IMG/VR virus record: IMGVR_UViG_3300032116_000004
Coordinates: 62,001 to 126,000 of that record
Strand: one strand, 5' to 3'
DNA length: 64,000 nt
Shown: piece after piece, positions 8,674 through 37,693 of the stretch
Numbering within the stretch: position 1 is the first letter of the stretch
Layout of the letters: the number at the start of each line of letters is the position of its first letter
Notes under the pieces: model-generated
Seen by the model: only the letters and a program-made list of their open reading frames with translations
What the model was told of the DNA's origin: nothing
Databases searched by the model: none
Made by a program: the position numbers and the translations under genes

Positions 8674-10233
8674 ATGTTTCTCACATACTTGATGCTGGCT
8701 GTGGCGCTGTGCCTCAGCGCCATCGCCGCATTCTATTCGATCATAGGTCTCACTGCCATATTTGCCGCGGCTGTGATTCCTGTGGCCGTCATGGGAACCA
8801 TATTGGAGATAGCCAAACTAACGGTCACTGTATGGTTGCATGAATACTGGCATCGTTGTAAACGAGCCATGAAAATATACTTGGTGCCTGCGGTGGGTAT
8901 GCTGATGTTGATCACTTCCATGGGCATCTTTGGCTTCCTGTCAAAGGCCCATCTAGATCAAGCAGTTCCCACTGGGGATGTGGCCGCACAAGTGGCCTTG
9001 CTAGACGAAAAGATAAAGACACAGCGAGACAACATCGAAGCCGCCCGACGTGCCCTGGCCCAGATGGATGCGGCTGTGGACCAAACACTCAGCAGATCAT
9101 CTGACGAGAAGGGTGCTGACAAAGCCGCGGCACTGCGCCGTGCTCAGGCCCGTGAGCGTGGCAACCTGCAAGGAGACATCTCTCGCGCACAGACCGAGAT
9201 AGCAAAATTAAACGAACAACGGGCACCCATAGCCGCAAATCTACGCAAAGTAGAAGCCGAGGTAGGTCCAATCAAATACATAGCGGCCTTGATCTATGGA
9301 GACAATCCTGATGCCAACTTACTGGAAAAGGCCGTGCGTTGGGTGATCATAATACTTGTGGTAGTGTTTGATCCCTTGGCCATATTCATGTTGTTGGCCG
9401 CCACTGAGAGTTACAAGTGGGAAAAATACGGTGCTCGAGATGATCCCGATGAACCAGAAAATCCGCCACCTGACAGCCCAGTGATGGATCGCATAAACGA
9501 ATGGCGCGACAAAATAAAAAAATGGAGGCAACCCAATGGTACCAATGCTGATGATGGCCAACCTATTGCCCAGGATCTGGCTAGACAACCTGACAGAGAT
9601 GATGCTGATGTTCAACCCACCGCTCCGATGGTGGCTATCCCACCTACGCAATGGGGCGGGCAAGATCTAACAAAACAAATCGTTGAAAATAATCGGCCCG
9701 GTGAACCTGTTTATGTCGACATGCCGGACATTGTCACTGTGCGTCCGGATGTGCAGTATGTAGGTGATGCCGATGAAGAAGAAACTCCTGAAGAAAAAGA
9801 TCCTGTAAAAAGGGCCAAGCGCCAATGGAAAGCGGACAATCCTGATGACACTTTACACAGACACGAAAAATTGTTGGCACAGGGCAAGATAGAACGACTA
9901 CCATGGGAACAGAGTCTACAACTGCAGGCAGATGATCAAGAACAATATGCCAATGTTGATTTTGGAACACGATTCCCTACAACTCCCGGTCGTGGGGATG
10001 CGTTTATCCGTGTAGATTTCCTGCCAACTAAACTGTTCAAATGGAATGGTGCGAAATGGATTGAAGTGGACAAAGAAATCACTGATTCATTCACCTACAA
10101 TGATGAGTATATCGAATATCTAATCGCCAAGATCGGTTCTGGTGAGTATGATGCTGATCTGCTCAACGAAAACGAAAGACAACAAATAGAAGCTAGGCTA
10201 CGAGATGATCCCAAATTCAACGGTCCAGCATGA
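8674..10233 (+). CDS. Membrane protein with coiled-coil and C-terminal soluble domain
   Basis: Three N-terminal TM helices, long coiled coil, further TM helix; TAAATA at 8663-8668. Confidence 0.75.
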   Translation: MFLTYLMLAVALCLSAIAAFYSIIGLTAIFAAAVIPVAVMGTILEIAKLTVTVWLHEYWHRCKRAMKIYLVPAVGMLMLITSMGIFGFLSKAHLDQAVPTGDVAAQVALLDEKIKTQRDNIEAARRALAQMDAAVDQTLSRSSDEKGADKAAALRRAQARERGNLQGDISRAQTEIAKLNEQRAPIAANLRKVEAEVGPIKYIAALIYGDNPDANLLEKAVRWVIIILVVVFDPLAIFMLLAATESYKWEKYGARDDPDEPENPPPDSPVMDRINEWRDKIKKWRQPNGTNADDGQPIAQDLARQPDRDDADVQPTAPMVAIPPTQWGGQDLTKQIVENNRPGEPVYVDMPDIVTVRPDVQYVGDADEEETPEEKDPVKRAKRQWKADNPDDTLHRHEKLLAQGKIERLPWEQSLQLQADDQEQYANVDFGTRFPTTPGRGDAFIRVDFLPTKLFKWNGAKWIEVDKEITDSFTYNDEYIEYLIAKIGSGEYDADLLNENERQQIEARLRDDPKFNGPA

Positions 10234-11429
10234 AAGAAGATACTTCATACGAACTTTGCAGTTTCTGCAACAAACACAAAGACGATGTTAAAAAACTCAT
10301 AGTGGCCAATGATGTGGCCATCTGCAACGATTGCGTGGATCTTTGCCAAAAACTCTTGCAAGAGGATCCGGTAACGAGAGAACACAATCACACAGACATT
10401 GATCCTCAAGAACTCAAACGTTATCTAGATCAGTATGTGATAGGGCAGGACCGTGCCAAGGTTGTCTTGGCAGTGGCCATCGCCAATCATTACAAACGCA
10501 TACAGAATCGCGATCCTGAAATAGAACTAGACAAGGCCAATATCCTGATGCTGGGCCCCACAGGATCGGGCAAGACCCTGCTGGCTCGCACCGTGGCACG
10601 TTATCTCGACGTGCCTTTTGCCATCGCAGATGCCACTAGCATAACCGAAGCCGGATATGTGGGCGATGATGTAGAAAGTCTCATACAGCGATTGCTCACT
10701 GCCGCTGGTGGCGATGTGGAAAAATGTCGTCGTGGTATAATATTTGTTGATGAAATTGACAAGATCGCTCGAAAAAGCGAATCAACATCTATCACCAGAG
10801 ATGTGAGTGGTGAAGGTGTGCAACAGGCCCTGTTGAAGCTGGTAGAAGGCACAGTATGCCGAGTTCCGGCTGGTGGCGGCCGCAAACACCCTGGTGGCGA
10901 AATGATCGAAATAGACACTGCCAATATACTGTTCATTGCCGGCGGCGCATTCGTGGGCCTAGACCAGATAGTGAAGAAACGACTGTTCGGGTCCTCCATG
11001 GGATTCAATGCTGAAGTCAAAGTATCAGGTGACGTGGATCTACAAAAGACCATGCCCGATGATCTGGTAAAATTTGGTCTGATACCTGAATTCGTCGGCC
11101 GTTTCCCTAGTTGGGTCAGCCTAGATGAACTGACCACGGATGATCTGGTGCATGTGCTCACAGATACCAAGAATTCATTGATACGTCAATATCAACACCT
11201 GTTTGCTTCAGACAGCATAGATCTTGATTTCGAGAACGAGGCCTTGACCACCATAGCACAGCGTTCTGCAGATTTCGGTACTGGTGCCCGCGCCTTGCAC
11301 AGCGAACTTGAGCGTGTGTTGATGCCACACATGTTCGCTATCAAACGCTATCGTGATCGGGGGATAAACCGCGTAGTTATTAACCGAGAGCAAATAAATA
11401 ACCCACAACCCGTTTACAAGGAGGAATAG
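10230..11429 (+). CDS. clpX: ClpX ATP-dependent protease ATPase subunit
   Basis: C4 zinc finger (CSFC..CNDC), GPTGSGKT, AGYVG, DEIDK, RDVSGEGVQQALLK, RKH, MGF loop, GAR. Confidence 0.97.
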   Translation: MKEDTSYELCSFCNKHKDDVKKLIVANDVAICNDCVDLCQKLLQEDPVTREHNHTDIDPQELKRYLDQYVIGQDRAKVVLAVAIANHYKRIQNRDPEIELDKANILMLGPTGSGKTLLARTVARYLDVPFAIADATSITEAGYVGDDVESLIQRLLTAAGGDVEKCRRGIIFVDEIDKIARKSESTSITRDVSGEGVQQALLKLVEGTVCRVPAGGGRKHPGGEMIEIDTANILFIAGGAFVGLDQIVKKRLFGSSMGFNAEVKVSGDVDLQKTMPDDLVKFGLIPEFVGRFPSWVSLDELTTDDLVHVLTDTKNSLIRQYQHLFASDSIDLDFENEALTTIAQRSADFGTGARALHSELERVLMPHMFAIKRYRDRGINRVVINREQINNPQPVYKEE

Positions 11430-11430
11430 T

Positions 11431-11643
11431 TTGGGTAAAACAGTGATCGTTCCGGATGGCAATGTAGAAAAGGCCCTGCGCCGATTCAAAAAAAAGATAC
11501 AGAATTCAGGTCTGTTGTTCGAACTCAAAGAACGTGAGACCTATGTCAAACCCACTACCCGCCGTAAACTCAAAGCCTCTGCCGCTAAAAAACGTTGGCA
11601 AAAATATCTACGTAGCCAGCAACTGCCTCCCAAAAAGTTCTAA
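11431..11643 (+). CDS. rpsU: Ribosomal protein bS21
   Basis: EKALRRFKKK..ELKERETYVKPTTRRK..AAKKR. Confidence 0.92.
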   Translation: MGKTVIVPDGNVEKALRRFKKKIQNSGLLFELKERETYVKPTTRRKLKASAAKKRWQKYLRSQQLPPKKF

Positions 11644-11894
11644 TGTATATCCGGTTCCGGTTGCCACAACACGGCGACTATCACCGCACCCTGGAATTCA
11701 TCAAACAGCAGGTGCAAAGTTGGGCTGAACAATATGGTGTGAGATACACGCAAAAAACCATAAAATACGAACATCGTGTGGCTTTTGATCACGACGAAAC
11801 CTATACCATGTGGGCCATGACATGGAACCCACCAGAACAGTTCCGGCGCTGGTTGGAATATGAATTGGTTAATGTGGCCGGCGAGCGATATTGA
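11643..11894 (+). CDS. Hypothetical protein
   Basis: Coupled to the rpsU stop. Confidence 0.6.
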   Translation: MYIRFRLPQHGDYHRTLEFIKQQVQSWAEQYGVRYTQKTIKYEHRVAFDHDETYTMWAMTWNPPEQFRRWLEYELVNVAGERY

Positions 11895-11921
11895 CAACTC
11901 TCAAAAAATCCTGTATAAATA
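11891..11921 (+). promoter_or_regulatory. Composite promoter for hsp20 (sigma70-like plus T4 late-type TATAAATA)
   Basis: TTGACA-17-TATAAA; TATAAATA at 11914-11921. Confidence 0.7.
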
Positions 11922-11925
11922 TATT

Positions 11926-11988
11926 TGTAGGTGCCGATGGTCGGGCCTACATAGTCAACTTGCTTAAAAAAGGAGAATGTTATGACTA
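11926..11988 (+). ncRNA. ROSE-like RNA thermometer in the hsp20 5' UTR
   Basis: Hairpin TGTAGG..CCTACA, then TAGTCA/TGACTA stem enclosing CTTGCTT opposite the AAGGAG SD and covering the start codon. Confidence 0.7.
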
Positions 11989-12419
11989 AAATCACATCTT
12001 TTGATCTCACCCCCTTCTATCGTAATACCATTGGCGTCGACCGCTTGTTCGACCGTATCATGGATCAGTTTGACCATGCCGCGCAAAGCCAGAACTACCC
12101 GCCTTACAACATCCTGAAAACAGGAGAAGACACCTATGAAATCCAGGTGGCAGTGGCTGGGTTTGCCGAAGGTGAAGTGAATGTAGATTTCCATGAAGGA
12201 CAGTTGGTGATCACCGGTGAAAAGAACACCGATGACTCAGAATTGAACTATCTACATCGCGGTATCTCGGCTCGCAAGTTCCTGCGCACATTCCAACTGG
12301 CTGATTATGTAGAGGTTCGCGATGCTGTGATGAAAGACGGCATCTTGAACGTGCATCTACAGCGCATCGTGCCCGAAGAAATGAAGCCAAAGCGTATTGC
12401 AATCTCATACGCAAAATAA
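11982..12419 (+). CDS. ibpA: Small heat shock protein Hsp20 (IbpA-like)
   Basis: IGVDRLF, NYPPYNI, AVAGF, YLHRGIS.RKF.R.F.LA, PEEMKPKRIAI. Confidence 0.95.
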   Translation: MTKITSFDLTPFYRNTIGVDRLFDRIMDQFDHAAQSQNYPPYNILKTGEDTYEIQVAVAGFAEGEVNVDFHEGQLVITGEKNTDDSELNYLHRGISARKFLRTFQLADYVEVRDAVMKDGILNVHLQRIVPEEMKPKRIAISYAK

Positions 12420-12478
12420 TATAATAGCGTAAATACAGTGGAGGGCACCCGCCCTCTACTGAGGACAAAGGGAACGAC

Positions 12479-12799
12479 ATGTCAGAAACTGCTACACAAC
12501 CCAAAACTAAAACAACCGTCAGGCCCAGAGAGGTGCTCAAAGAACCTCCCATGTTCAAAGTTATCTACATCAATGACAATAAAACTGCCATGGAATTCGT
12601 GATTGAAAGCCTGGTAGAACATTTTGATTACAGCCCCTCAACAGCAGAAAAAATCACTTTCGACATCCATGAAGCAGGATCTGCAGTGGTGGCCGTGTTG
12701 CCCTATGAGATAGCCGAACAAAAAGGCATCGAAGTCACTGTGATGGCACGTGGTGCCGGGTATCCTTTACAGGTCAAACTAGAGCCAGATTCGGCCTAG
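12479..12799 (+). CDS. clpS: ClpS N-degron adaptor
   Basis: PPMFKVIYINDNKT.MEFV, IH..GSAVV, EIAEQK, YPLQVKLE. Confidence 0.92.
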   Translation: MSETATQPKTKTTVRPREVLKEPPMFKVIYINDNKTAMEFVIESLVEHFDYSPSTAEKITFDIHEAGSAVVAVLPYEIAEQKGIEVTVMARGAGYPLQVKLEPDSA

Positions 12800-13587
12800 A
12801 GACTTATTTCAATCCTACGAGGGTAATACACAGGCTTGCACCAAGGTGTGTTGCCTCTTCCTCTACAGTTGTTGACATATCTGATGCCTTGTATGGTGGT
12901 ATCAACATCGCCGTGGTAGTGTCCAAAACACCAAGTAGAGATCTTGCTCTCGGTGTCCTCGCCCAATACCTGCGTCATATAACTGTTGCCTGAACAGTTG
13001 ATCCTATAGCTGTCGGCTATCTCGATGTCATGATGTATGAGATCCAAACGCGGTGGAGTATGGGTGATCAACACTATTTTTTTCACGTCTTGATGCGTCT
13101 GCAATCTACGCACTGATCTGGCCAGATAAGCGAAATCCTGCATGCTCATGGATTCTATGGCATCCGAAACTGTCCTATCAACTTGGTATCTGTCTTGGAA
13201 CCACAACCGCGTCTGATCATAGTCCACTCCAGGTTCAAAATCGAAACTCCACCAACCATTGGTACCCAGGAATGCTACACCATCAACGATGACTACATTG
13301 TCTTGGAGATAGGTAACATTGGGTATGTCGCTTATTTCTTCCACTAGACTGCGATAACTGTCCCCAAGATCGTTCAAGGTCCATCGATGCTCGTCGTTGC
13401 CATCTATGAACATCACTGCACGATATCGTTGGCTGAGTTTTTCCAAAGCATCTTTGACCAAGGCACGGTCTCGAGACACATCTCCGGCCACCACACAAAG
13501 AGTAGCAGTGGCCTGTCCTTCCCAATCAAATGGTTGATCCCAAGTTTCCACATGGAGGTCTGAAATTAAATCAAATGCTATTGGCAT
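12796..13587 (-). CDS. Calcineurin-like metallophosphoesterase
   Basis: SDLH, AGD, GNDEH, THT, FGHYH, NCRG. Confidence 0.88.
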   Translation of the reverse strand: MPIAFDLISDLHVETWDQPFDWEGQATATLCVVAGDVSRDRALVKDALEKLSQRYRAVMFIDGNDEHRWTLNDLGDSYRSLVEEISDIPNVTYLQDNVVIVDGVAFLGTNGWWSFDFEPGVDYDQTRLWFQDRYQVDRTVSDAIESMSMQDFAYLARSVRRLQTHQDVKKIVLITHTPPRLDLIHHDIEIADSYRINCSGNSYMTQVLGEDTESKISTWCFGHYHGDVDTTIQGIRYVNNCRGRGNTPWCKPVYYPRRIEISL

Positions 13588-13611
13588 GATACATATTTAA
13601 AAGGATTTTTT

Positions 13612-13986
13612 ATGCACATAATATTTGGCAAAGAAACAGCAGAGGGGTTGAAGGACAAATACACGGTGTTGGAACTGGATCAGATACAGATACAATCCAA
13701 TGGTCCGATTTTGGACAGTTTCTGTGTGTTGGACACTGATGCAGTGAGATTGGAAGAAATAGGTACCATGCCTAATATCATCAATCTCCATGCCAAACTC
13801 ATGGAAAACTATCGCAAGCGGAATTGGGGTTTCTGCGAACAGGCCATAGAACACCTACACGGACGCTGGGGCGGCACGCTGAACAGCTTCTATGATGAAA
13901 TTTCTCAGAGAATCGCTAAGTATAAACACAAGGACCCAGGTCCGGATTGGAACGGCGTATATGAAAAATTTAGTAGCGACCGTTAG
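13612..13986 (+). CDS. Hypothetical protein resembling the C-terminal helical domain of class III adenylate cyclases
   Basis: LELDQI..Y...W..C..AI..L.G...FY...RI...PDWNGV pattern; no catalytic domain. Confidence 0.5.
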   Translation: MHIIFGKETAEGLKDKYTVLELDQIQIQSNGPILDSFCVLDTDAVRLEEIGTMPNIINLHAKLMENYRKRNWGFCEQAIEHLHGRWGGTLNSFYDEISQRIAKYKHKDPGPDWNGVYEKFSSDR

Positions 13987-21475: not shown

Positions 21476-21490
21476 TTAATGGAGGAAACA

Positions 21491-25999: not shown

Positions 26000-27019
26000 A
26001 TGACTGCTCGAATTGGTTTTTGTTGTAAATGGTTAGACGATCCCAGTGAAACTGCTGGCATGAAAGTCAATGCCAAGAATCGTGAACTCAATGGGCGGAG
26101 CACTACCATGCGTTGGTTGCGTGAGCATGCAGACCAAGCAGAACAGCGCCAGTGGGACATCATGAATCACAATGCACAGGCCGCTCTCAACATGGTAGAA
26201 CGTGTGGGCAGTCTACCTCATCATCTACGCATGGTTCGACTGGGGTCTGAAATGCTACAAGGCTACACAGAACCCAACTGGATTGACTGGTGGCAACAAG
26301 CAGACATCCAACGACACCTAGAAAAGATCTTTGCTCCTGTGGGTGCCCGTGCCCGAGAGTTGGGAGTAAGACTTTCATTCCATCCTGGACAGTTCTGTGT
26401 GTTAGCATCAGAGAACGACGGCATCGTGGAACGTAGCATCCAAGAGTTTGAATATCATGCAGACATGGCCCGCTGGATGGGCTATGGCGCCACCTGGCAT
26501 GATCATGGCTTCAAGATCAATGTTCACCTGTCGGGCAAGGGTGGGCCTGAAAAATTCTTGCGTAGCCTGGGCAAACTTAGCCCCGAGGCACGCAATCTCA
26601 TAACTATCGAAAACGACGAGATATCAAATGGTTTGGACCTTACTTTGCTTGTGGCTGATAACGTGGCTCTTGTGCTGGACATTCATCACCATTGGGTCAA
26701 AACAGGAGAATACATCGATCCCCAAGATGATCGTGTTCAGCGTGTGGTTGAGTCTTGGCGTGACGTTCGCCCTGCTATGCATTACAGTGTTAGTCGCGAA
26801 GATATTCTTGTTGATCATGATCCCCGAGTTCGCCCAGATCTTGCTGGACTTCTTGCACGAGGTCATAAAAAACAGCAACTCCGCGCCCACTCGGATTTCT
26901 ATTGGAATTCGGCTGTGAACGACTGGGCCGCTGGTTTCTCCGATCAGTTTGACATCCAGTGCGAGGCCAAAGGTAAAAATCTAGCAAGAGATGGTTTCGC
27001 CAAGCACGTCACTGTGTGA
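26000..27019 (+). CDS. uvsE: UV damage endonuclease
   Basis: RIGFCC, RLSFHPGQF.VL.S, IENDE, LDIHHH, HYS, RAHSD, EAK.K. Confidence 0.93.
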   Translation: MTARIGFCCKWLDDPSETAGMKVNAKNRELNGRSTTMRWLREHADQAEQRQWDIMNHNAQAALNMVERVGSLPHHLRMVRLGSEMLQGYTEPNWIDWWQQADIQRHLEKIFAPVGARARELGVRLSFHPGQFCVLASENDGIVERSIQEFEYHADMARWMGYGATWHDHGFKINVHLSGKGGPEKFLRSLGKLSPEARNLITIENDEISNGLDLTLLVADNVALVLDIHHHWVKTGEYIDPQDDRVQRVVESWRDVRPAMHYSVSREDILVDHDPRVRPDLAGLLARGHKKQQLRAHSDFYWNSAVNDWAAGFSDQFDIQCEAKGKNLARDGFAKHVTV

Positions 27020-27785
27020 TATCCCTTTTGATGTAGAAGTTCCCTATGCCATGCGGCCGCACATGCGACCTTGGCAACCCGGTGAGTCCATACTGACCAC
27101 GGACAGGGATTTTGATCGATATCAAGACGCCAAACTCAACAACTACAATCCGGTATATGGAGATTCAGCCAGTCGTGAACTGGTTTATCAAGCCGTAGAT
27201 GCACTGAGAAAATATGATCCCACTGCACCTGTGATCCAAGGAGATGCTCCTGTGTGGCAACTAACTCGGGCACTACAGGAAGACTTTGTGATATGGGCAC
27301 CCAATCGTGCCGGCGAACTCTCTGCACAGATACTGAGTGTGTGCTTGCCATCGGGGTGGGATCCTCAAACCAAAGTCAACAAGACTTTCCTTGAAATACA
27401 TGAACCCGTGCCAGACTTTGACATAGTCAACAAGGCATCTGGACACATCGCACGTATGATCACTACCCGGGGTCCTTTCATAAGATCAGTGTGGAGTATA
27501 GCCAACCGTCCTGCGTTGAGCAGACATCCCAGTGGTGTAGAAGCATGGTCCACGGAGACAATAGATGACATGTGGTTCAGATCGGAACGCCAGACCACTA
27601 TACCCATACACAGTCAAGCCGCGCTGTTTTTGATCAGAGTCTACATGATACCACTACGGGATGTGTTCCAAGACGCAGATAAAAAACAAAGGATCATCAG
27701 CAGTGTGATGAGCATGACTGATGCTGTGATCGAATACAAAGGCCTAGGATACTTGCGGAGTTATTTCGCTAATCGGCGTGTCTAG
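26991..27785 (+). CDS. Heme-dependent oxidative N-demethylase alpha-subunit-like protein (DUF3445-type)
   Basis: QEDF, VCLPSGW, K..K.F.EIH.PVP, R..W, RSERQT, LF.IRVY. Confidence 0.72.
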   Translation: MVSPSTSLCDIPFDVEVPYAMRPHMRPWQPGESILTTDRDFDRYQDAKLNNYNPVYGDSASRELVYQAVDALRKYDPTAPVIQGDAPVWQLTRALQEDFVIWAPNRAGELSAQILSVCLPSGWDPQTKVNKTFLEIHEPVPDFDIVNKASGHIARMITTRGPFIRSVWSIANRPALSRHPSGVEAWSTETIDDMWFRSERQTTIPIHSQAALFLIRVYMIPLRDVFQDADKKQRIISSVMSMTDAVIEYKGLGYLRSYFANRRV

Positions 27786-28131: not shown

Positions 28132-28361
28132 TTGGCAGCAGGTTTCTTGGCTCTCACTGCTTTGGCACGGACAGCAGGTTTCTTTTCCCCAGCAGGTTTT
28201 TTGGCAGCCGGTTTTTTCTTAGGCGCCGCAGCCTCGGAGTATTGTGTGGACATAGGTATCACACCAGGTGTGGTCTGTGGTGCTTCAACTTTGTAAGGGG
28301 CCTCTGGGCAAGGACTTACGGTGGGCTTGGAACCAAAAAACTTTTTTAAAAATGCGAGCAT
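28128..28361 (-). CDS. Small Lys/Ala/Pro-rich protein
   Basis: APYKVE plus KKPAA repeats; GGAG RBS; late motif upstream. Confidence 0.7.
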
Positions 28362-28419
28362 TGCAGTCTCCTTTGTTTTATATAGTGTATTTACACAGCA
28401 TATTATCGAAACCTAGCAT

Positions 28420-28443
28420 ATTGCACTGCAATGTAACTAAATA
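28420..28443 (+). promoter_or_regulatory. PhaR-box-like palindrome next to a late-type TAAATA upstream of aceA
   Basis: ATTGCA-C-TGCAAT at 28420-28432; TAAATA at 28438-28443. Confidence 0.55.
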
Positions 28444-28468
28444 TCCTGGCTCAACAGGAGGAAACACC

Positions 28469-29746
28469 ATGCAAGACCGTAGATGGAAGGTATACAAACT
28501 GCAACAAGAATGGACAGAAAACCCGCGCTGGACCGGAATCAAACGTGATTATTCAGCCGAGGACGTGGTGCGTTTGCAAGGTTCCAACCCCATAGAATAC
28601 AGTCTGGCACGGCGTGGCGCCGAAAAATTGTGGCGTTTGCTACATGAACAAGATTATGTCAACACCCTGGGAGCACTCACGGGCATGCAAGCCCTGCAAC
28701 AGGTCAAGGCCGGTTTGAAGGCTATATATTTGAGTGGGTGGCAAGTGGCCGCTGATGCCAACTTGGCTGGCGCCATGTATCCTGATCAGAGCCTGTATCC
28801 CGCAGACTCTGTGCCAGCAGTGGTGCGTAGGATCAACAATGCTTTTACCAGAGCAGATCAGATCGCCTGGATGGAAGACCAAGAAGATCGAGATTTTTTC
28901 GCACCCATCGTGGCTGACGCAGAGGCAGGATTTGGTGGTGTGCTCAATGCGTTCGAACTCATGAAGGCCATGATCGAAGCCGGGGCCGCAGGTGTGCATT
29001 TTGAAGATCAATTAGCGTCCGTAAAGAAATGCGGACACATGGGAGGAAAAGTCCTTGTTCCAACACGAGAAGCCATCAATAAACTTATTGCCGCTCGTCT
29101 CGCTTCTGATGTTATGGGAGTGCCTAGTCTTGTTATTGCTAGAACAGATGCCGAAGCCGGCGATCTTATCACTTCAGATATTGATCCTAACGACGTTCCT
29201 TTTCTTACTGGTGAAAGAACTGTGGAGGGTTTCTATCGGACCCGAGCAGGATTCGACCAAGCAGTCAGTAGAGCCCTGGCCTACTGTCCTTACGCAGATC
29301 TCGTATGGTGCGAAACAGGCAAACCCGACCTCGACTTCGCCAAGCGATTCGCCGAAGCCATACACCGACAGTTTCCGGGCAAGATGTTAGCCTACAACTG
29401 CTCACCATCATTCAACTGGAGGAAGAACCTAGATGCAGACACAATTGGCCGTTTCCAACGTGAACTTGGAGCAATGGGTTACCGTTTTCAATTCATCACA
29501 CTTGCTGGATTCCATGCTCTTAATCATGGCATGTTTGACCTTGCTCATGGCTATGCTAGGGACGGCATGTCTGCTTTCGTGGAGTTACAAGAGCGTGAGT
29601 TCGCGGATGCGAGCCGTGGTTTCGAAGCTGTCAAACATCAGAGAGAAGTAGGAACCAGTTACTTTGACCGCGTGACTACCACAGTGGAGGCTGATGCTTC
29701 CACCCAGGCTCTCAAAGGCTCAACAGAAGAAGAACAGTTCCACTGA
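28469..29746 (+). CDS. aceA: Isocitrate lyase
   Basis: [31 protein letters not shown] catalytic loop, [16 protein letters not shown]; AGGAGG RBS. Confidence 0.97.
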
Positions 29747-29852
29747 TGGCAAGCACTTGGTCTAGAGTATCTCGACGCAAAAAGATCAAATACGCTGTGA
29801 TCTCGGTATTATGGTGTGCAGGTCTGGCCATTGCGATATGGATCAATCTGCA

Positions 29853-30047
29853 ATGATGCGTAGCATTGAACGCATCTGGGCTCGAGCCACAGGTCATGTC
29901 ATGGGCAACACTGACGAAGACCGCCCTAGAGTGCCCATCTTGACCATGAGAGAAGCAAGGGTAGCACTCTGCCTCAAAACGTTCTGGATAGTGATCCATG
30001 TGATCACTTGCGGATTCATAATAGCAAATGTCATAAGGCACTGGTAA
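29853..30047 (+). CDS. Small membrane protein
   Basis: IWARATGH.MG..D..P motif with C-terminal TM helix. Confidence 0.6.
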   Translation: MMRSIERIWARATGHVMGNTDEDRPRVPILTMREARVALCLKTFWIVIHVITCGFIIANVIRHW

Positions 30048-30048
30048 A

Positions 30049-30678
30049 ATGTTAGAAACCATATGTGAAACATTAGTAGAGGCATACCGCCGCAACTGGA
30101 TCACCAGTCGAGACGGCAACGTCAGCATTCGGCATCATGATCGAGATCATTTCTACATCACACCATCAGGAGTGAGAAAGCAGACCCTACAACCAGACCA
30201 GTTCAAGAAGATCATGATTCTTGAAAATGGTCCAGTGTCTCTCTGGCGAGAAGATTATTACACTGACATCAGCGCCAATCTCAAACCCAGCGGCGAGATT
30301 CCTTTGCACTTTGGACTGCAACGACGCATGGGACAACATGCCTCGGAGGTGCGTGTGGTAGTTCACTTGCATCCAACATACTGTGTGGCGGCCATGCACC
30401 GTGGCATCAATTTAGGCGACATTGTTGCGGACTTTCCAGAACTCAGTAGATATACCAAGGTAGCACCCAATGTGGGAGATGTGCCGCCTATAAGCCAAGA
30501 ACTGGCAGATCGTTGCCACGAAAATTTACAATTAGATCAACAAGGCAACATCGCCTTTGACATCGTGGGCATCCGTGGACATGGTGTGGTTGCTATCGAT
30601 ACCTCACCGTGGCGTGCGTTTGAACACATAGAACGGCTGGAACATATCTGCAAGATAGTGTTGGCCTCGGGAGCGTGA
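30049..30678 (+). CDS. Class II aldolase/adducin family protein
   Basis: DGNVS.R, ITPSG, PSGE..LH, HLHP, GHG. Confidence 0.88.
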   Translation: MLETICETLVEAYRRNWITSRDGNVSIRHHDRDHFYITPSGVRKQTLQPDQFKKIMILENGPVSLWREDYYTDISANLKPSGEIPLHFGLQRRMGQHASEVRVVVHLHPTYCVAAMHRGINLGDIVADFPELSRYTKVAPNVGDVPPISQELADRCHENLQLDQQGNIAFDIVGIRGHGVVAIDTSPWRAFEHIERLEHICKIVLASGA

Positions 30679-31289
30679 TGCAGTTCGTCAGCGATCGCGA
30701 CGTGTATGACTCATGCCCACCACAGTGGTTGTGGGTCTATGACAAACTCATAGTGGCACGAAGACAGGGCATCGCCGCTGGACCGGCTGGTATTCCCGTA
30801 CCATGGTCCGGAGAATATGTGATAAGACCTATCACCAACATCCGCATGATGAGTCGAGGTGCGCAGATCGTGTGGATGGAAAAAGGTGACAGTGACACAG
30901 TGCCCGATGGATTTTTCTGGACCCAGGTGCTCGAAGGTCCGCATGTGTCAGTGGACTACCATTGGGGCCAACAGCATCTCACGGTGCAAGGTTTCAGAGA
31001 TGATCCTCGGAGATTGGATCGTTTTTCACGGTGGTGTCGAACGGATTTAGATCGGCCTTTTCCTGGGATGTTGCACGATCTCAAGTATTATCAGGAATGG
31101 ATCAACGTAGAATACATCGGCGATACAGTGATCGAAGTGCATCTACGATACAATGATGATTTCGCCAATCATGATAGTGATGAGATCTGGCCTGTATGGC
31201 CCGAATCCAGCCAACAACAGCCTCCCGGTACACAGTGGTATCACAGCCCTGCTGGTAGTAGATTGGGCTTCTGGATCAAGGATAAGTAA
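30675..31289 (+). CDS. Conserved phage protein, possible ATP-grasp-like fold
   Basis: YVIRPI.N..M, H.SVDY, INVE.I...IEVHLR. Confidence 0.55.
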   Translation: MMQFVSDRDVYDSCPPQWLWVYDKLIVARRQGIAAGPAGIPVPWSGEYVIRPITNIRMMSRGAQIVWMEKGDSDTVPDGFFWTQVLEGPHVSVDYHWGQQHLTVQGFRDDPRRLDRFSRWCRTDLDRPFPGMLHDLKYYQEWINVEYIGDTVIEVHLRYNDDFANHDSDEIWPVWPESSQQQPPGTQWYHSPAGSRLGFWIKDK

Positions 31290-31293
31290 TTTG

Positions 31294-32004
31294 ATGCTCC
31301 TATTCATATACATCCTGGTGATGACACACATCACCATAGCTTGTGTCACACTTTACTTGCATCGTAGCCAGGCACATAGAGGTGTGACATTTGATCCACG
31401 TGTGGCACATTTCATGAGATTTTGGCTGTGGCTCACCACAGGCATGGTCACCAAACAGTGGGTGGCCACACACAGAAAACATCACAGATTCACTGACGCG
31501 GAAGGTGATCCGCACAGTCCGCAAAATGAAGGAATTTGGCAGATTTTATTAGGCGGTGCTTTTTACTATGCCTGGGCCGCAAAAGACAAAGCCATGGTCA
31601 ACCAGTATGGTGTGGGCACGCCCGATGACTGGGTAGAGCGTCACATCTATGCACCATTCAACTGGTTGGGGGTGACCTTGATGTTCTTTATCAACTGCAT
31701 GATTTGGGGCTGGGACTGGGGTTGGTTGCCTTGGCTATGGCAGATGATTTGGATCCCACTGTGGGCAGCCGGCGTCATAAACGGCCTGGGACACTGGTGG
31801 GGTTATAGGAACACTCAAACCAAAGACTATTCCACTAATATTGTGCCCTGGGCATTCTTCATCGGTGGTGAAGAACTACACAACAATCATCATGCTGATC
31901 CAGCTTCGCCTAAACTCAGCCAAAAACCCTGGGAATGGGATCTAGGATGGACTTATATCAAAGGGCTAGAACGATTTGGTTTGGCCTACAACATCAAGTC
32001 TTAG
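31294..32004 (+). CDS. Membrane fatty acid (acyl-CoA delta-9-type) desaturase
   Basis: His boxes HRSQAH, HRKHH, HNNHH; DPHSP. Confidence 0.92.
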   Translation: MLLFIYILVMTHITIACVTLYLHRSQAHRGVTFDPRVAHFMRFWLWLTTGMVTKQWVATHRKHHRFTDAEGDPHSPQNEGIWQILLGGAFYYAWAAKDKAMVNQYGVGTPDDWVERHIYAPFNWLGVTLMFFINCMIWGWDWGWLPWLWQMIWIPLWAAGVINGLGHWWGYRNTQTKDYSTNIVPWAFFIGGEELHNNHHADPASPKLSQKPWEWDLGWTYIKGLERFGLAYNIKS

Positions 32005-32465: not shown

Positions 32466-32473
32466 AGTTCAAA

Positions 32474-32809: not shown

Positions 32810-32837
32810 TTTGGTAAAAAAACGGTTAACCGGTCAC

Positions 32838-32886
32838 TAGACCAAAAATCCTACTTGTGTAATAATACACACATAGTAGGATTTTT
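32838..32886 (+). promoter_or_regulatory. Promoter embedded in a long inverted repeat (may also terminate phasin mRNA)
   Basis: AAAAATCCTACT/AGTAGGATTTTT arms with inner TGTGT/ACACA; TAGACC-17-AATAAT. Confidence 0.5.
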
Positions 32887-32911
32887 TATGACCAATCTTT
32901 AAGGAGTTCGC

Positions 32912-33037
32912 ATGAAGCACTTGGTTTTTGCAGTATTGGTGGCCAGCCTTTTGGTTGGTTGTGGCACGATCGGTGGCGCGGTTTCCGGCGCCGGCCAAGA
33001 TCTTTCCAAAGCCGGAGAATGGATCAAAAACAAATGA
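32912..33037 (+). CDS. Entericidin EcnA/B-like lipoprotein
   Basis: LVGC lipobox, T.GG..SG.GQD...AG; AAGGAG RBS; not in the ORF track. Confidence 0.75.
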   Translation: MKHLVFAVLVASLLVGCGTIGGAVSGAGQDLSKAGEWIKNK

Positions 33038-34814: not shown

Positions 34815-34905
34815 ACTAGCCTATTTTGGATTTGCTCATAAGTAGTATGCAATCCAAAAAAATTTGTTATAATATGCGTATATAACGAATTCACTACTCA
34901 AAAAT

Positions 34906-35487
34906 ATGTCGACCATGATCCAAGACAAAGACGATGTTGCATACTCGCCAGGTGACGATCTCAAAAAAAGTGGCATCTACACTTTTATGGGTGAAGTAGA
35001 CGCTGAGTCCATGTTGCCCATCATTGAGTGGATCTTGCATGAAAACTACATAGTCAAGAAAAAGAAAAAAGAACTCATACTGATGATCTGCAGTCGTGGC
35101 GGAGACATGGAAGAGGCCTTTGCGCTGATCGATGTCATGAACAGCAGTTCGATCCCCATCAAAACCGTGGGCCTGGGTCAGATAGCCAGTTGTGGTCTGT
35201 TGATATTCCTGGCAGGCACCAAAACTCGCAGAGTGCTCACGCCCAACACTTCCATACTCAGCCACCAGTATTCATGGGGCAGTGATGGCAAGCATCACGA
35301 ACTGTTTGCTATAACCAAGGAATTTGGATTGGCCCAACAACGGATGATCGATCACTACAGTGCTACCACTGGGCTGGATGAAGATACCATCAAAACCAAA
35401 TTGTTGCCTGCCAATGATGTTTGGCTCAGCGCCGAGGAAGCACTGGCACTGGGCATCTGTGATCACATAGCCAACGTCAGCCGTTAG
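34906..35487 (+). CDS. Divergent ClpP-family (S14) protease
   Basis: ICSRGG, GQIASCG (Ser), ILSHQ (His), DVWLSAEEA (Asp). Confidence 0.88.
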   Translation: MSTMIQDKDDVAYSPGDDLKKSGIYTFMGEVDAESMLPIIEWILHENYIVKKKKKELILMICSRGGDMEEAFALIDVMNSSSIPIKTVGLGQIASCGLLIFLAGTKTRRVLTPNTSILSHQYSWGSDGKHHELFAITKEFGLAQQRMIDHYSATTGLDEDTIKTKLLPANDVWLSAEEALALGICDHIANVSR

Positions 35488-37040
35488 AAGTTCTTGCGGC
35501 GTTTTCTTCCTAGACCTCGTTCATCACCCACTGCCACTGTGTCTGACGCTTTGATGTCGGATCTTGGCGCTTGATAATCGGCGATGTCCTGATCGCTACC
35601 GGGTTCAGTGCCGCCTGATGTGTCTGCGTTGGCCACGGCCTTGGGTTCTTTGTTGATGTTGAACACCAACTTGCCACCCGAACTTGAAGTAGAACTGTAA
35701 CTCTTCTCTGCTTCTATGGTCACTTGTGTGAACAATTTGCTGGGCCACACAGTGCGGAAACCCTTGATGATGATGTCCGTGCCTTTCTTGGCAGCTTCAG
35801 TATACATCTGCACAAAGGCCGAATTGTTGAGGATGTCTGCGGCCGCGTCAGAGAAATTGGTTCTTGTGTTGATCTCGTTGCAGACTTTGTATGCCAGGCT
35901 GGCCACCATGTGCTCCAAAGGAACCACCTTGCTGGCATCTTTGACGGTTCTGTCATTGTAGATCTGGCGTAGATTGTCAGTCAATCCTTGGACCTTGCGG
36001 ATGTCCACAGACTGGGTCAAAGGCGTGAGCGTGGGTATGATGGCACCGGCTTCGGCTTCGTCGATGATACCCAACTGTGTGGCCAGTTCAATGGGTCCGC
36101 TCCAGTGATTGCCTTGTTCTATGGTTTCCAAGATATCTATCACTGATTGATATTGATCCACTATGTCTCCAAGGCCTGCATCGCGCAGTTCTCGGGCAGA
36201 CTTCAACAAGTTGATCACTGATGCCATGGCGCCTTTGGCGCCTTTGGAACTGAGTTTGATCTGCTTGCCATTGGGAGCGATCAACAGACTGTCAAACAGG
36301 CCACCACTCACGCCTTCGTTGAACGATACCACGCAATCAGAATAATTTCCACCCAAGAACACTTCGGCGGCTTTGCCAGCGTTGCCTGTGATGGGTTTGC
36401 CCTGGATCAAGGCCACGGGCTGTAGCATCTCGCAGAAGTAGTCCCGGAATCCGTTGAAATCAATGCCTTCGCCGGGCACGATGATGGGAAAGTCTGTGGC
36501 TTGGTAGAATATGCGAGTGGCTTGACCAATGGGGCTGTCTTCTCCGAACTTGGCCATGATCTGTTGATAGATAGATTCTGGTGTTTGGCTCCGGAATTCC
36601 GTGAGCACTTGGCTGGGCTTGTAACCCACAGTTTCTTTTTCGCCACGTGCTGTCTTGTAGGTAAACTCTCCAGGTATGTCTGCGGTCTGGAAAAATGTGT
36701 TCTTGGTCCGTATTGGGTTGATCTCTTTGGCAAATTTTACCAGGTATCTGCGGCCCACTGCTGTATCAAAAGTGGCCAAGCCAAATGCTTTGGTGCCGGC
36801 TGTGGGGCGATTTATGGGCTCTACACCGGGTTTTAGTTTGGCCTTGAGTTTGTCAAAAACCTGCATCATTTCTTCAGAACTGTCATAGGCACCAGATTCG
36901 GGATAGAATTGCAGGCCCTGGAACACTATGAGATCGTCTTGCTCTTTGCTCCCGGTGCGCACGAATTCCTCACCGGGATTCCTGGCGCTGAGTCCACGTG
37001 ATTCTTCTAGGTTTTCTATGATATCGATTAGGTTTCTCAT
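35484..37040 (-). CDS. Hypothetical, probably virion (internal head) protein
   Basis: MRNLIDIIENLEES leader typical of T4-type processed head proteins; TAAGTA upstream. Confidence 0.55.
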   Translation of the reverse strand: MRNLIDIIENLEESRGLSARNPGEEFVRTGSKEQDDLIVFQGLQFYPESGAYDSSEEMMQVFDKLKAKLKPGVEPINRPTAGTKAFGLATFDTAVGRRYLVKFAKEINPIRTKNTFFQTADIPGEFTYKTARGEKETVGYKPSQVLTEFRSQTPESIYQQIMAKFGEDSPIGQATRIFYQATDFPIIVPGEGIDFNGFRDYFCEMLQPVALIQGKPITGNAGKAAEVFLGGNYSDCVVSFNEGVSGGLFDSLLIAPNGKQIKLSSKGAKGAMASVINLLKSARELRDAGLGDIVDQYQSVIDILETIEQGNHWSGPIELATQLGIIDEAEAGAIIPTLTPLTQSVDIRKVQGLTDNLRQIYNDRTVKDASKVVPLEHMVASLAYKVCNEINTRTNFSDAAADILNNSAFVQMYTEAAKKGTDIIIKGFRTVWPSKLFTQVTIEAEKSYSSTSSSGGKLVFNINKEPKAVANADTSGGTEPGSDQDIADYQAPRSDIKASDTVAVGDERGLGRKRRKNF

Positions 37041-37070
37041 TGCAGATATTTTCAGTGTATGCTATACTTA
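37040..37070. promoter_or_regulatory. Overlapping divergent promoters
   Basis: Plus strand TTGCAG-17-TATACT (clpP); minus strand TAAGTA at 37065-37070. Confidence 0.5.
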
Positions 37071-37102
37071 TCTAGGATACTTACTTACAACAAGGAGAAA
37101 CA

Positions 37103-37693
37103 ATGCCCAATCTAGTGCCTATCGTGCTGGAACAGACTAGCCGTGGAGAACGCAGTTATGACATCTACAGCCGCCTGCTGAGAGATCGCATCATCATGCT
37201 GGATACAGACGTAAACTCACATTCAGCCAGCCTCATAGTGGCGCAGATGCTGTTCCTAGAAGCGGAAAATCCTGACAGAGACATCTTGTTCTATATCAAC
37301 TCACCAGGCGGGTCAATCACAGCGGGCATGAGCATCTATGATACCATGCAGTTCATCAAGTGTGATGTTTCTACCATAGTGTGTGGATTGGCCGCGTCGA
37401 TGGGCTCCATGCTGGCCTGCGCCGGCACTGCTGGCAAGCGGTTCATCCTGCCACACAGCCAGCACATGATCCATCAACCTCTGGGTGGAGCTGAAGGACA
37501 GGTCACTGAAGTGGAGATCCGTTACAAAGAACTCATGCGCTGGAAGAAGACCTTGACTGAACTCTATGTCCAGCACACCGGCAAAGACTATGCGACTCTG
37601 GAGAAAGATATGGATCGAGACAACTGGATGACAGCACAACAGGCCGTGGAGTATGGCCTAGCTGATCGCATCATCACCCAACGAGATGTCTAA
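37103..37693 (+). CDS. clpP: ClpP protease proteolytic subunit
   Basis: [46 protein letters not shown]. Confidence 0.97.

What the first reader, a model, noticed from the sequence alone, without database searches (positions are those of the whole stretch)
10230..37693. Near-complete phage-encoded Clp proteostasis kit: ClpX, ClpS, Hsp20 and two different ClpPs
Seen: clpX with zinc-binding domain and MGF docking loop, clpS, hsp20, a canonical clpP (37103) and a divergent clpP with an intact Ser-His-Asp triad but no canonical N-terminal strand (34906). A YccA/BI-1 homolog lies at 60098. Known: ClpS works with ClpA, which is absent here; paired ClpPs can form hetero-tetradecamers; YccA modulates FtsH. 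The substrate pocket here reads NDNKT rather than the usual NDDYT. Inference: the phage retargets proteolysis, for example at host defence or regulatory proteins, using an altered-specificity N-degron adaptor.
Basis: partly seen in the sequence, partly recalled or inferred. Interest (0 to 1): 0.65.

Follow-up and report, generated by a model that had tools for sequence, protein, structure and literature searches.

The report
Jumbo phage's own Clp protease system
A 316-kb freshwater jumbo phage carries intact genes for a full ATP-dependent Clp protease system (ClpX, ClpA, ClpS, a standard ClpP and a phage-specific second ClpP), which is real and conserved but of a kind already described in other jumbo phages.

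Summary
The window encodes intact ClpX (10230-11429), an IbpA-like Hsp20 (11982-12419), ClpS (12479-12799), a divergent ClpP (34906-35487) and a canonical ClpP (37103-37693). The MGF loop, the NDNKT motif and the intact Ser-His-Asp triad are as described.

The claim that ClpA is absent is true only of the window. The same 315,778-bp virus record has a DnaJ, peptide deformylase, ClpA (760 aa) operon about 24 kb past the window's end. All five near-complete relatives I searched also have ClpA. A model places ClpS on the ClpA N-domain (score 0.87, best control 0.01).

The divergent ClpP is unlikely to be the capsid protease, because a T4-type S77 prohead protease sits next to the gp23-type capsid gene. 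It is a widespread phage lineage with a conserved triad. It has lost the docking tyrosine, other pocket residues and the Arg next to the catalytic Asp. This suggests a non-docking partner subunit, as in ClpP1P2 systems, but that is not shown.

The core N-degron contacts of ClpS are intact. The D36N change is conserved across the clade but lies at the edge of the pocket, so altered specificity is only weakly supported.

Agrobacterium phage Atu_ph07 (2018) and Sinorhizobium phage Phosso already show the same kit, so this is a new member of a known kind.

The parts
10230..11429 (+). clpX (399 aa). It has an N-terminal C4 zinc-binding domain, Walker A/B motifs, a GYVG pore loop, an RKH loop and an MGF loop for docking on ClpP.
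   Evidence: NF003745 541.8 bits (cut-off 359), PF06689 50.7 bits, PF07724 107.5 bits. Translation. Full-length alignment to a solved ClpX, with MGF under IGF. Found upstream of clpS in 78 of 80 related viral loci.
11431..11643 (+). Ribosomal protein bS21 gene (70 aa), directly after clpX. It is part of the conserved block but not a Clp component.
   Evidence: PF01165 63.2 bits. Present after clpX in 69 of 80 related loci.
11982..12419 (+). hsp20, a small heat-shock protein of the IbpA/IbpB type (145 aa).
   Evidence: PF00011 65.5 bits. NF008013 IbpA 132.6 bits, below its cut-off of 212. Conserved just upstream of clpS in all 80 related loci. Contigs without differences cover 11935/11946-12429 in two freshwater metatranscriptome runs and parts of the gene in a third.
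12479..12799 (+). clpS (106 aa), the N-degron adaptor for ClpA. The core pocket residues and the ClpA-contact residues are kept. The clade-specific changes are Y30, N34 and T60 (E. coli L32, D36, M62).
   Evidence: PF02617 82 bits. Alignment to E. coli and A. tumefaciens ClpS structures. Conservation over 60 unique clade sequences. Predicted complex with ClpA residues 1-150 scores 0.87, best control 0.01.
34906..35487 (+). Divergent clpP, called ClpP' here (193 aa). It has the ClpP fold with the handle helix and an invariant triad S95/H120/D171. The N-terminus is variable and non-canonical. The docking tyrosine, other pocket residues and the Arg next to the catalytic Asp are replaced.
   Evidence: PF00574 98.9 bits, below every NCBIfam ClpP cut-off (best 86.6 against 228). 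Clade conservation. AlphaFold2 model with pLDDT 81; the 50 listed top Foldseek hits are all true ClpPs, TM about 0.85. 34 related viral loci and 6,214 metagenomic proteins at E <= 1e-10, the 120 listed at 69-99% identity.
37103..37693 (+). Canonical clpP (196 aa). It starts at the position of the mature E. coli N-terminus. The triad is S99/H124/D173, and the docking tyrosine Y64 and the Arg-Asp pair are present.
   Evidence: PF00574 266.9 bits, NF001368 307.4 bits (cut-off 249). 257 bits to E. coli ClpP structures over the full length. Lies within 4 kb downstream of ClpP' in 25 of 34 related loci, and directly adjacent in L017 and L029.
60098..60766 (+). Membrane protein of the Bax inhibitor-1/YccA family (222 aa). 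It is peripheral, and any link to the Clp genes is unproven.
   Evidence: PF01027 153.3 bits. YccA equivalog NF007765 scores only 42.1 bits against a cut-off of 353.

Best explanation
The window is part of an uncultivated freshwater jumbo phage of about 316 kb with a T4-type head. The phage encodes its own two-unfoldase Clp protease system.

Proposed mechanism:
- ClpX hexamers (MGF loops) and ClpA hexamers (IGF loops) dock on rings of the canonical phage ClpP and feed unfolded proteins into it.
- ClpS binds the ClpA N-domain and hands over proteins with N-degron-type N-termini.
- The second peptidase, ClpP', is catalytically competent but has lost the features needed to dock an unfoldase. It most likely works as a partner ring or partner subunit of a canonical ClpP, phage or host, as ClpP1 does in ClpP1P2 systems.
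- The system sits in conserved blocks with translation and folding genes: bS21 and Hsp20 beside clpX and clpS, and DnaJ and peptide deformylase beside clpA. Its most likely job is therefore phage-controlled protein quality control and turnover in the infected cell. That would cover clearing misfolded or aggregated protein and recycling host protein during a very large protein-synthesis programme. Targeted removal of particular host proteins is possible but has no evidence.

Shown: gene identities, the motifs, conservation, synteny, and the presence of ClpA and of a separate capsid protease.
Inferred: who binds whom beyond the ClpS-ClpA model, the hetero-oligomer, and the physiological role.
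For: - Family assignments and motifs.
- ClpA: a full-length match to TIGR02639 (801.7 bits) and to E. coli ClpA structures (589 bits, residues 11-725). It has no ClpB middle domain, and IGF sits where E. coli has IGL. It is present at 65-82% identity in 5 of 5 near-complete relatives.
- ClpS: the ClpA-contact residues E77, E80 and K82 are invariant in 60 unique sequences. The predicted ClpA(1-150)-ClpS complex scores 0.87 with a best control of 0.01. That mark was reached by 51 of 78 solved complexes and 2 of 108 mismatched pairs. The runs agree in at least 73% of contacts and the partner's pLDDT is at least 83. The interface uses ClpS residues 72-84.
- Synteny: clpX-hsp20-clpS is found in 78 of 80 related viral loci, and ClpP' with canonical ClpP in 25 of 34.
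- ClpP': the triad is invariant in 26 unique sequences. E. coli Y62, F82, L114 and L189 are replaced by M, S/A, T and S/A. The Arg before the catalytic Asp is replaced by N/H/Q/S. PMC6889138 calls this tyrosine highly conserved in all ClpP sequences, and shows that pocket composition controls one-sided ATPase docking in ClpP1P2. The modelled fold is that of a full ClpP.
- A separate S77 prohead protease lies next to gp23.
- The DnaJ, deformylase, ClpA order is shared with phage Phosso.
- hsp20, and part of clpS, occur as identical contigs in freshwater RNA libraries. The neighbouring clpX and bS21 do not, although a DNA run covers the whole stretch.
Against: - There is no biochemical evidence for any complex.
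- The ClpS-ClpA pass may reflect memory of solved E. coli complexes, and it does not tell the phage ClpA from a host ClpA.
- ClpP' and the canonical ClpP can be separated. Two of five near-complete relatives lack ClpP'. The complete genomes of phages BUCT-ZZ01 and RsoM2USA have ClpP' as their only ClpP-family gene. A fixed phage ClpP/ClpP' hetero-tetradecamer therefore cannot be the general rule.
- ClpA and ClpS score below NCBIfam's equivalog cut-offs.
- RNA-library contigs cannot prove transcription.
- The physiological role is inferred from gene neighbours only.
Confidence: 0.65

Rival explanations
1. The phage proteins work mainly by plugging into host machines rather than with each other. 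Phage ClpS would redirect host ClpAP, phage ClpX and ClpA would use host ClpP, and ClpP' would co-assemble with host ClpP. The aim would be to retarget degradation at host defence or regulatory proteins.
For: - Iyer et al. propose that phages encoding only ClpS bring targets to the host ClpAP (PMC7824862).
- ClpP' occurs without any phage canonical ClpP in BUCT-ZZ01 and RsoM2USA, so there it must act alone or with host subunits.
- The ClpS pocket rim differs from E. coli in a clade-conserved way: N34 in 56 of 60 sequences, T60 in 59 of 60, Y30 in 60 of 60.
- The canonical ClpP, and the docking loops of ClpX and ClpA, are close enough to bacterial ones for cross-docking to be plausible.
Against: - This clade carries every component itself. 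ClpA and canonical ClpP are each found in 5 of 5 near-complete relatives.
- The core N-degron contact residues are unchanged (PMC8346999).
- No L/F-transferase gene that would create new degrons was found.
- No target is identifiable from the sequence.
Confidence: 0.25
2. The divergent ClpP is a virion maturation protease (prohead protease) of the ClpP-like type, unrelated to the ATP-dependent system.
For: The best PHROG for it is phrog_94, 'head maturation protease' (82 bits). NCBIfam Clp_rel_HeadMat gives 56.4 bits. Several weaker phage hits are annotated as head maturation proteases.
Against: - The same PHROG scores the canonical ClpP much higher (182.6 bits), so the label is not specific.
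- The HeadMat score is below its cut-off of 120 and below the scores to true ClpP models (86.6 bits).
- The genome has a T4-type S77 prohead protease (95.5 bits) directly upstream of the gp23 capsid gene (332 bits), at the far end of the genome.
- ClpP' lies among metabolic and unknown genes here, and among non-structural genes in Phosso, BUCT-ZZ01 and RsoM2USA.
- It has no scaffold or capsid fusion, and its model matches full ClpP including the handle helix.
- It is linked to the canonical clpP in 25 of 34 loci.
Confidence: 0.05
3. ClpP' is a stand-alone peptidase that works without any unfoldase and without a canonical ClpP, for example as a homo-oligomer that degrades short peptides.
For: The triad is invariant. 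ClpP' is the only ClpP-family gene in two complete phage genomes. The docking pocket is degraded, so it does not look built for an ATPase.
Against: - It has lost the Arg next to the catalytic Asp. From my own knowledge, not checked in a paper, this Arg couples ring stacking to activity in studied ClpPs, which argues against an active homo-tetradecamer.
- It is tightly linked to the canonical clpP in this clade.
- The hosts of the two phages that have ClpP' as their only ClpP gene have ClpPs of their own that could serve as partners (general knowledge, not tested here).
Confidence: 0.15

Closest known systems
Clp gene set of Agrobacterium phage Atu_ph07 and Sinorhizobium phage Phosso (jumbo phages)
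   Same: [quoted passage not shown] Phosso has ClpX (50.5% identity), ClpA (40.6%), ClpS (34%), canonical ClpP (58%) and a ClpP' homologue (50%), with the same DnaJ, deformylase, ClpA order.
   Different: - This phage is smaller (316 kb against 469-490 kb), comes from fresh water and is uncultivated.
- The AAA_2 scan found only ClpX and ClpA, so no ClpB was seen.
- Its genes are grouped in tighter blocks: clpX-bS21-hsp20-clpS, and clpP' close to clpP. In Phosso these genes are scattered.
- Protein identities are only 34-58%, so this is a distant relative and not the same lineage.
Bacterial two-paralogue ClpP1P2 proteases (Mycobacterium, Streptomyces, Listeria, Chlamydia, Leptospira, cyanobacteria)
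   Same: There are two ClpP paralogues, one with a normal docking surface and one without. [quoted passage not shown] Here the canonical ClpP keeps the pocket tyrosine and ClpP' has lost it. The two genes are linked.
   Different: Co-assembly has not been shown. ClpP' is only about 25% identical to any solved ClpP and forms its own phage lineage. It also lacks the Arg beside the catalytic Asp and has a conserved Lys-rich stretch (residues 51-55). The pair is not obligate: some relatives have only one of the two genes.
E. coli ClpAPS N-degron pathway
   Same: ClpS has the conserved pocket residues (E. coli N34, D35, T38, M40, H66) and the ClpA-contact residues (E79, E82, K84). ClpA has an N-domain, two AAA+ modules and a ClpP-docking loop. 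The modelled ClpS-ClpA N-domain interface falls in the expected region.
   Different: E. coli D36, M62 and L32 are N, T and Y in nearly all clade members. No L/F-transferase gene (PF03588) is present in the phage. ClpS and ClpA are in different operons about 76 kb apart.
PA5oct-like Pseudomonas jumbo phages and Rak2/G17-like phages
   Same: They encode ClpA, ClpS and/or ClpP. ClpA is reported as conserved in most Rak2-like phages (PMC6102473).
   Different: Identities are lower: ClpS 36%, ClpA 36-39%, ClpP 46%. These phages did not appear among the 30 listed ClpX or ClpP' hits, though further records were not listed.

Membership tests
ClpX | Scores above the curated equivalog cut-off over the full length | tested here: met
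   NF003745 541.8 bits (cut-off 359) and TIGR00382 522.7 bits (cut-off 370.75), covering residues 6-393.
ClpX | N-terminal C4 zinc-binding domain, Walker A/B, GYVG pore-1 loop, RKH loop, and an IGF-type loop for ClpP docking | tested here: met
   PF06689 50.7 bits. All motifs can be read in the translation. MGF aligns under the IGF of a solved ClpX.
ClpP (canonical, 37103-37693) | Ser-His-Asp triad, N-terminal axial-loop motif, docking-pocket tyrosine, and a family score above the cut-off | tested here: met
   S99/H124/D173, an N-terminus reading [14 protein letters not shown], and Y64. NF001368 307.4 bits against 249. TIGR00493 287.5 bits is slightly below its cut-off of 308.6.
ClpP (divergent ClpP', 34906-35487) | ClpP fold and catalytic triad | tested here: met
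   PF00574 98.9 bits (cut-off 20.2). S95/H120/D171 are invariant in 26 unique clade sequences. The model has pLDDT 81, and the 50 listed top Foldseek hits are all true ClpPs at TM about 0.85.
ClpP (divergent ClpP', 34906-35487) | Conserved docking-pocket tyrosine and hydrophobic pocket, canonical N-terminal loop, Arg beside the catalytic Asp, and NCBIfam ClpP cut-offs | tested here: not met
   E. coli Y62 is M, F82 is S/A, L114 is T, L189 is S/A, and the Arg is N/H/Q/S. Residues 1-18 are variable and lack the motif. The best NCBIfam ClpP score is 86.6 bits against a cut-off of 228. It is therefore a ClpP-superfamily peptidase but not an orthodox ClpP.
ClpP1P2-type hetero-oligomeric peptidase | Two paralogues that co-assemble into one tetradecamer, with the ATPase docking on one face only | not testable with these tools
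   Only indirect evidence is available: gene linkage in 25 of 34 loci and unequal docking surfaces. Against an obligate pairing, each gene occurs alone in some genomes. My one complex-prediction job went to ClpS-ClpA.
ClpS | ClpS domain with the N-degron contact residues (E. coli N34, D35, T38, M40, H66) | tested here: met
   PF02617 82 bits (cut-off 23). N32, D33, T36 and H64 are invariant and M38 is found in 48 of 60 clade sequences. The residue list comes from PMC8346999. NCBIfam equivalog cut-offs are not reached (70.2 bits against 149).
ClpS | Acidic residue at E. coli D36 flanking the pocket | tested here: not met
   Asn in the window and in 56 of 60 clade sequences. The role of D36 in the pocket's negative potential is described in bioRxiv 10.1101/2025.05.22.655665.
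ClpS | Binds the N-domain of ClpA | tested here: inconclusive
   Contact residues E77, E80 and K82 are invariant. The predicted complex scores 0.87 with a best control of 0.01. The mark was reached by 51 of 78 solved complexes and 2 of 108 mismatches. Contact agreement is at least 73% and the partner's pLDDT at least 83. The pass may come from memory of solved complexes. This is a model, not a measurement.
ClpA | Clp_N domain, two AAA+ modules, no ClpB middle domain, and a ClpP-docking loop | tested here: met
   PF02861, PF00004, PF17871, PF07724 and PF10431 all match. TIGR02639 scores 801.7 bits over positions 3-726 of 734, below its cut-off of 993. ClpB models match only in two separate pieces. 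IGF lies under the E. coli IGL loop.
Hsp20 / IbpA | Alpha-crystallin domain | tested here: met
   PF00011 65.5 bits (cut-off 20.8). The IbpA equivalog scores 132.6 bits against 212, so it is IbpA-like and not an equivalog.
ClpP-like prohead (capsid maturation) protease | Lies in the head module and is the phage's capsid protease | tested here: not met
   A separate S77 protease is at G000:C1:312548-312967, next to gp23 at 314401-315369. ClpP' lies more than 210 kb away among non-structural genes. Clp_rel_HeadMat scores 56.4 bits against a cut-off of 120.
YccA (FtsH modulator) | Scores as a YccA equivalog | tested here: not met
   NF007765 42.1 bits against a cut-off of 353. Only Bax1-I family membership is shown (PF01027, 153 bits).

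The most novel reading that the evidence does not exclude
ClpP' would be a phage-evolved 'partner' peptidase found across unrelated large phages: this freshwater clade, Atu_ph07/Phosso-like phages, a T4-like cyanophage and a Ralstonia jumbo phage. It would co-assemble with whatever canonical ClpP is present, host or phage. Having lost the docking pocket and the Arg sensor, it would turn the symmetric protease into a one-faced machine with new cleavage or gating properties. That would be a viral way to re-programme the host's central protease. The clade-specific ClpS pocket rim (D36N, M62T, L32Y) would widen or shift the set of N-termini delivered.
Probability: 0.3. Interest if true: 0.6.

Novelty: new member of a known kind. 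Interest (0 to 1): 0.35.

Why it matters
The result shows that a large, abundant group of freshwater jumbo phages keeps a self-sufficient ATP-dependent protease system. I found hundreds of viral contigs, and the ClpP' search returned 6,214 metagenomic relatives at E <= 1e-10. The system is grouped with translation and folding genes. This fits the view that big phages bring their own proteostasis machinery.

The idea itself is already published for Atu_ph07 and reviewed for jumbo phages, so this window adds breadth rather than a new principle.

Two features do not appear in the papers I read and could be tested. The first is the ClpP' lineage: an intact triad, no docking tyrosine, and no Arg beside the catalytic Asp. 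The second is the clade-wide ClpS pocket-rim signature.

Tried and rejected
- Nucleotide search against known phages found no match, so the clade is known only from metagenomes.
- I looked for genes that would complete an N-degron pathway or a chaperone set in the genome. There is no L/F-transferase (PF03588), no Hsp70 and no Cpn60. DnaJ and peptide deformylase were found.
- The two weaker AAA_2 hits elsewhere in the genome are clamp-loader-like and MoxR-like ATPases, not Clp, Lon or FtsH. I did not scan for the Lon or FtsH protease domains.
- I tested whether the genes flanking ClpP' could be partners:
  - The 366-aa and 251-aa upstream ORFs and the 518-aa ORF on the opposite strand have no Pfam or PHROG family.
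  - The 518-aa ORF is virus-only, with weak hints of a PD-(D/E)XK nuclease fold.
  - The ClpP' neighbours in cyanophage BUCT-ZZ01 are unrelated to them.
  - I therefore dropped the idea of a conserved partner gene.
- The promoter and terminator scan of 9900-13700 found no more sites than shuffled sequence.
- The window has no tRNA and no Rfam family.
- Five fragments with ClpP' but no nearby canonical ClpP are only 11-30% complete, so they say nothing about absence.
- I did not use the exhaustive protein-representative search, because family scans and the word search left nothing open.

Full report
**What the window is.** The window is bases 62001-126000 of a single 315,778-bp IMG/VR virus record (linear, CheckV completeness 91%). 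Genes are closely packed, mostly on the + strand, and many have no known family. The genome has a T4-type major capsid gene (PF07068, 332 bits) and, just upstream, a T4-type S77 prohead protease (PF03420, 95.5 bits). Near-identical DNA is held by lake-water and freshwater metagenome runs from many studies. Megablast finds no known phage. Protein searches point to distant kinship with Agrobacterium phage Atu_ph07 and Sinorhizobium phage Phosso.

**Checking the observation.**
- ClpX (10230-11429) passes the NCBIfam equivalog cut-off (541.8 bits against 359). It has the C4 zinc finger, Walker motifs, GYVG, RKH and an MGF loop. The MGF loop aligns under the IGF loop of a solved ClpX.
- Hsp20 (11982-12419) is IbpA-like.
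- ClpS (12479-12799) scores 82 bits on PF02617 and reads NDNKT where E. coli has NDDYT.
- The canonical ClpP (37103-37693) aligns over its full length with E. coli ClpP, starting at the mature N-terminus.
- The divergent ClpP (34906-35487), called ClpP' here, passes Pfam's ClpP model and has Ser95, His120 and Asp171. It lacks the canonical N-terminal motif.
- The gene at 60098 is a Bax1-I family protein, but it falls far below the YccA equivalog cut-off.

**The main correction: ClpA is present.** A scan of the whole record with the AAA_2 family found a second strong hit outside the window. It is a 760-aa ORF at G000:C1:150413-152695. It contains Clp_N, two AAA+ modules and the D2-small domain. 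It matches the ClpA model end to end (801.7 bits), while ClpB models match only in two separate pieces. It aligns with E. coli ClpA over residues 11-725, with IGF where E. coli has its IGL docking loop.

Directly upstream lie a DnaJ (J domain plus C-terminal domain) and a peptide deformylase. Phage Phosso has the same order. ClpA is present at 65-82% identity in all five near-complete relatives I searched (316-353 kb, two with terminal repeats).

The ClpS residues that contact the ClpA N-domain in E. coli (E79, E82, K84) are invariant in 60 unique clade sequences. A predicted complex of ClpA residues 1-150 with ClpS scored 0.87, against a best control of 0.01. That mark was reached by 51 of 78 solved complexes and 2 of 108 mismatched pairs. 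The runs agree in at least 73% of contacts and the partner's pLDDT is at least 83. The interface uses ClpS residues 72-84. Like complexes have been solved, so this shows likeness and does not prove binding. Either way, ClpS needs no exotic partner.

**Conservation and linkage.** ClpS relatives occur in at least 574 viral stretches. In the 80 best, hsp20 sits just upstream in all, clpX upstream in 78, and bS21 directly after clpX in 69. ClpP' relatives were found in 34 viral loci. The word search returned 6,214 metagenomic proteins at E <= 1e-10, the 120 listed being 69-99% identical, some on contigs of 310-340 kb. A canonical clpP lies within 4 kb downstream of clpP' in 25 of the 34 loci, and directly adjacent in two.

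The linkage is not absolute. Two of five near-complete relatives have only the canonical ClpP. The complete genomes of Synechococcus phage BUCT-ZZ01 and Ralstonia phage RsoM2USA have a ClpP' homologue (50% and 33% identity) as their only ClpP-family gene. Phosso has both.

**What ClpP' is.** In 26 unique clade sequences the triad and long stretches around it are invariant, so the protein is under selection as an enzyme. An AlphaFold2 model (pLDDT 81) matches true ClpPs at TM about 0.85, including the long handle helix. All 50 listed top hits are ClpPs.

Three things set it apart:
- Its first 18 or so residues are variable and lack the axial-loop motif.
- The docking-pocket residues are replaced. 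E. coli Y62, F82, L114 and L189 become M, S/A, T and S/A. Y62 is the tyrosine that PMC6889138 describes as conserved in all ClpP sequences.
- The Arg just before the catalytic Asp is N/H/Q/S.

In M. smegmatis ClpP1P2, the composition of the ClpP1 pocket is one of the features that restrict ATPase docking to the ClpP2 ring (PMC6889138). By analogy, ClpP' looks like a subunit that does not dock an unfoldase and depends on a canonical partner. This is an inference from sequence. I could not model or measure the pair.

**Is ClpP' the capsid protease?** This is unlikely, for four reasons.
- The genome has its own S77 protease next to the capsid gene, more than 210 kb away.
- ClpP' sits among metabolic and unknown genes here, and among non-structural genes in three isolated phages.
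- It scores higher to true ClpP models than to the ClpP-related head-maturation model, which it fails (56.4 bits against a cut-off of 120).
- The PHROG label 'head maturation protease' fits the canonical ClpP even better, so the label is uninformative.

**The ClpS pocket.** PMC8346999 lists the residues that hold the substrate's amino group and backbone: E. coli N34, D35, T38, M40 and H66. All are present, and they are invariant or nearly so in the clade.

The differences are at E. coli D36 (Asn in 56 of 60), M62 (Thr in 59 of 60), L32 (Tyr in 60 of 60) and Y37 (variable; Lys here, Gln in most). D36 is one of two acidic residues flanking the pocket that are proposed to repel acidic residues at substrate positions 2-5 (bioRxiv 10.1101/2025.05.22.655665). 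A conserved D36N could therefore relax that bias. The changes are real and clade-wide, but they are at the rim. They do not show a new class of degron. The phage has no L/F-transferase gene.

**Expression hints.** In three freshwater metatranscriptome runs, contigs with no differences cover hsp20. Two of them cover it almost exactly (11935/11946-12429). One run also covers part of clpS (12437-12644). No identical contig covers clpX or bS21, whereas a DNA run covers the whole stretch evenly. This fits strong hsp20 expression, but contigs in RNA libraries cannot prove transcription.

**Most likely mechanism.**
- ClpX and ClpA-ClpS dock through their MGF and IGF loops on the canonical phage ClpP.
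- ClpP' joins a canonical ClpP, phage or host, as a second non-docking catalytic partner.
- The system works together with Hsp20 and DnaJ, and next to bS21 and peptide deformylase, as phage-controlled protein quality control and turnover during infection.
- Targeted destruction of host proteins is possible but has no support in the sequence.

**Comparison with what is known.** The Atu_ph07 paper (2018) already lists seven Clp-family genes in one phage, including ClpX, ClpA, ClpB, ClpP, ClpS and a 'Clp protease-like protein', and discusses the same ideas (PMC6102473). A 2021 survey of jumbo phages notes phage ClpP, ClpS, ClpA and ClpX (PMC7824862). Phosso has homologues of all five proteins studied here. 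So this is a new member of a known kind, from a large uncultivated freshwater clade.

Three details are not in the papers I read:
- the ClpP' lineage and its lost docking and sensor residues;
- the ClpS rim signature;
- the tight clpX-bS21-hsp20-clpS block.

**Limits.** There is no biochemistry, no host and no ClpP'-ClpP model. The survey covered only five near-complete relatives. Lon and FtsH protease domains were not searched. The exhaustive protein search was not used.

Noticed in passing
window 11431-11643 (+): A 70-aa ribosomal protein bS21 gene (PF01165, 63 bits) lies directly after clpX. It is kept in that position in 69 of 80 related viral loci.
   Followed up: partly
G000:C1:149205-150450 (outside the window; L124:1495-2740): A DnaJ gene (J domain plus C-terminal domain, 264 aa) and a peptide deformylase gene (172 aa) lie immediately upstream of clpA and overlap slightly. 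Sinorhizobium phage Phosso has the same order.
   Followed up: partly
window 28268-32004 (+): There is a run of metabolic genes unusual for a phage: isocitrate lyase (PF00463, 360 bits), a class II aldolase (PF00596) and a fatty acid desaturase (PF00487).
   Followed up: no
window 37686-39008 (+): A radical SAM/SPASM-domain protein (440 aa) starts inside the last codons of the canonical clpP. It is found after clpP in many related loci.
   Followed up: no
window 35484-37040 (-): A 518-aa ORF on the opposite strand lies between the two clpP genes and is conserved in about 20 of 34 related loci. It is virus-only with no family, and has weak structural hints of a PD-(D/E)XK nuclease core.
   Followed up: partly
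window 517-1644, 5372-6754, 21458-22735, 26000-27785 (+): Other auxiliary genes in the window: ribonucleotide reductase small subunit, ATP-dependent DNA ligase, UDP-glucose/GDP-mannose dehydrogenase, UV endonuclease UvdE, and a haem-dependent oxidative N-demethylase-like protein.
   Followed up: no
window 12796-13587 (-): A metallophosphoesterase (phrog_1649, 110 bits) lies convergent with clpS and is conserved there in 72 of 80 related loci.
   Followed up: no
window 12441-12456: A 16-base G+C-rich inverted repeat lies between hsp20 and clpS. The RNA-library contigs covering hsp20 stop just before it, at 12429, and the clpS contig in run X18 starts just before it, at 12437.
   Followed up: no
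window 10230-12799 (sequencing runs): Besides lake and freshwater metagenomes, nine runs labelled 'fungus metagenome', each filed under its own study code, hold this stretch: eight at 0.99 of the sampled words and one at 0.66. The label may hide a freshwater origin, which I did not resolve.
   Followed up: no
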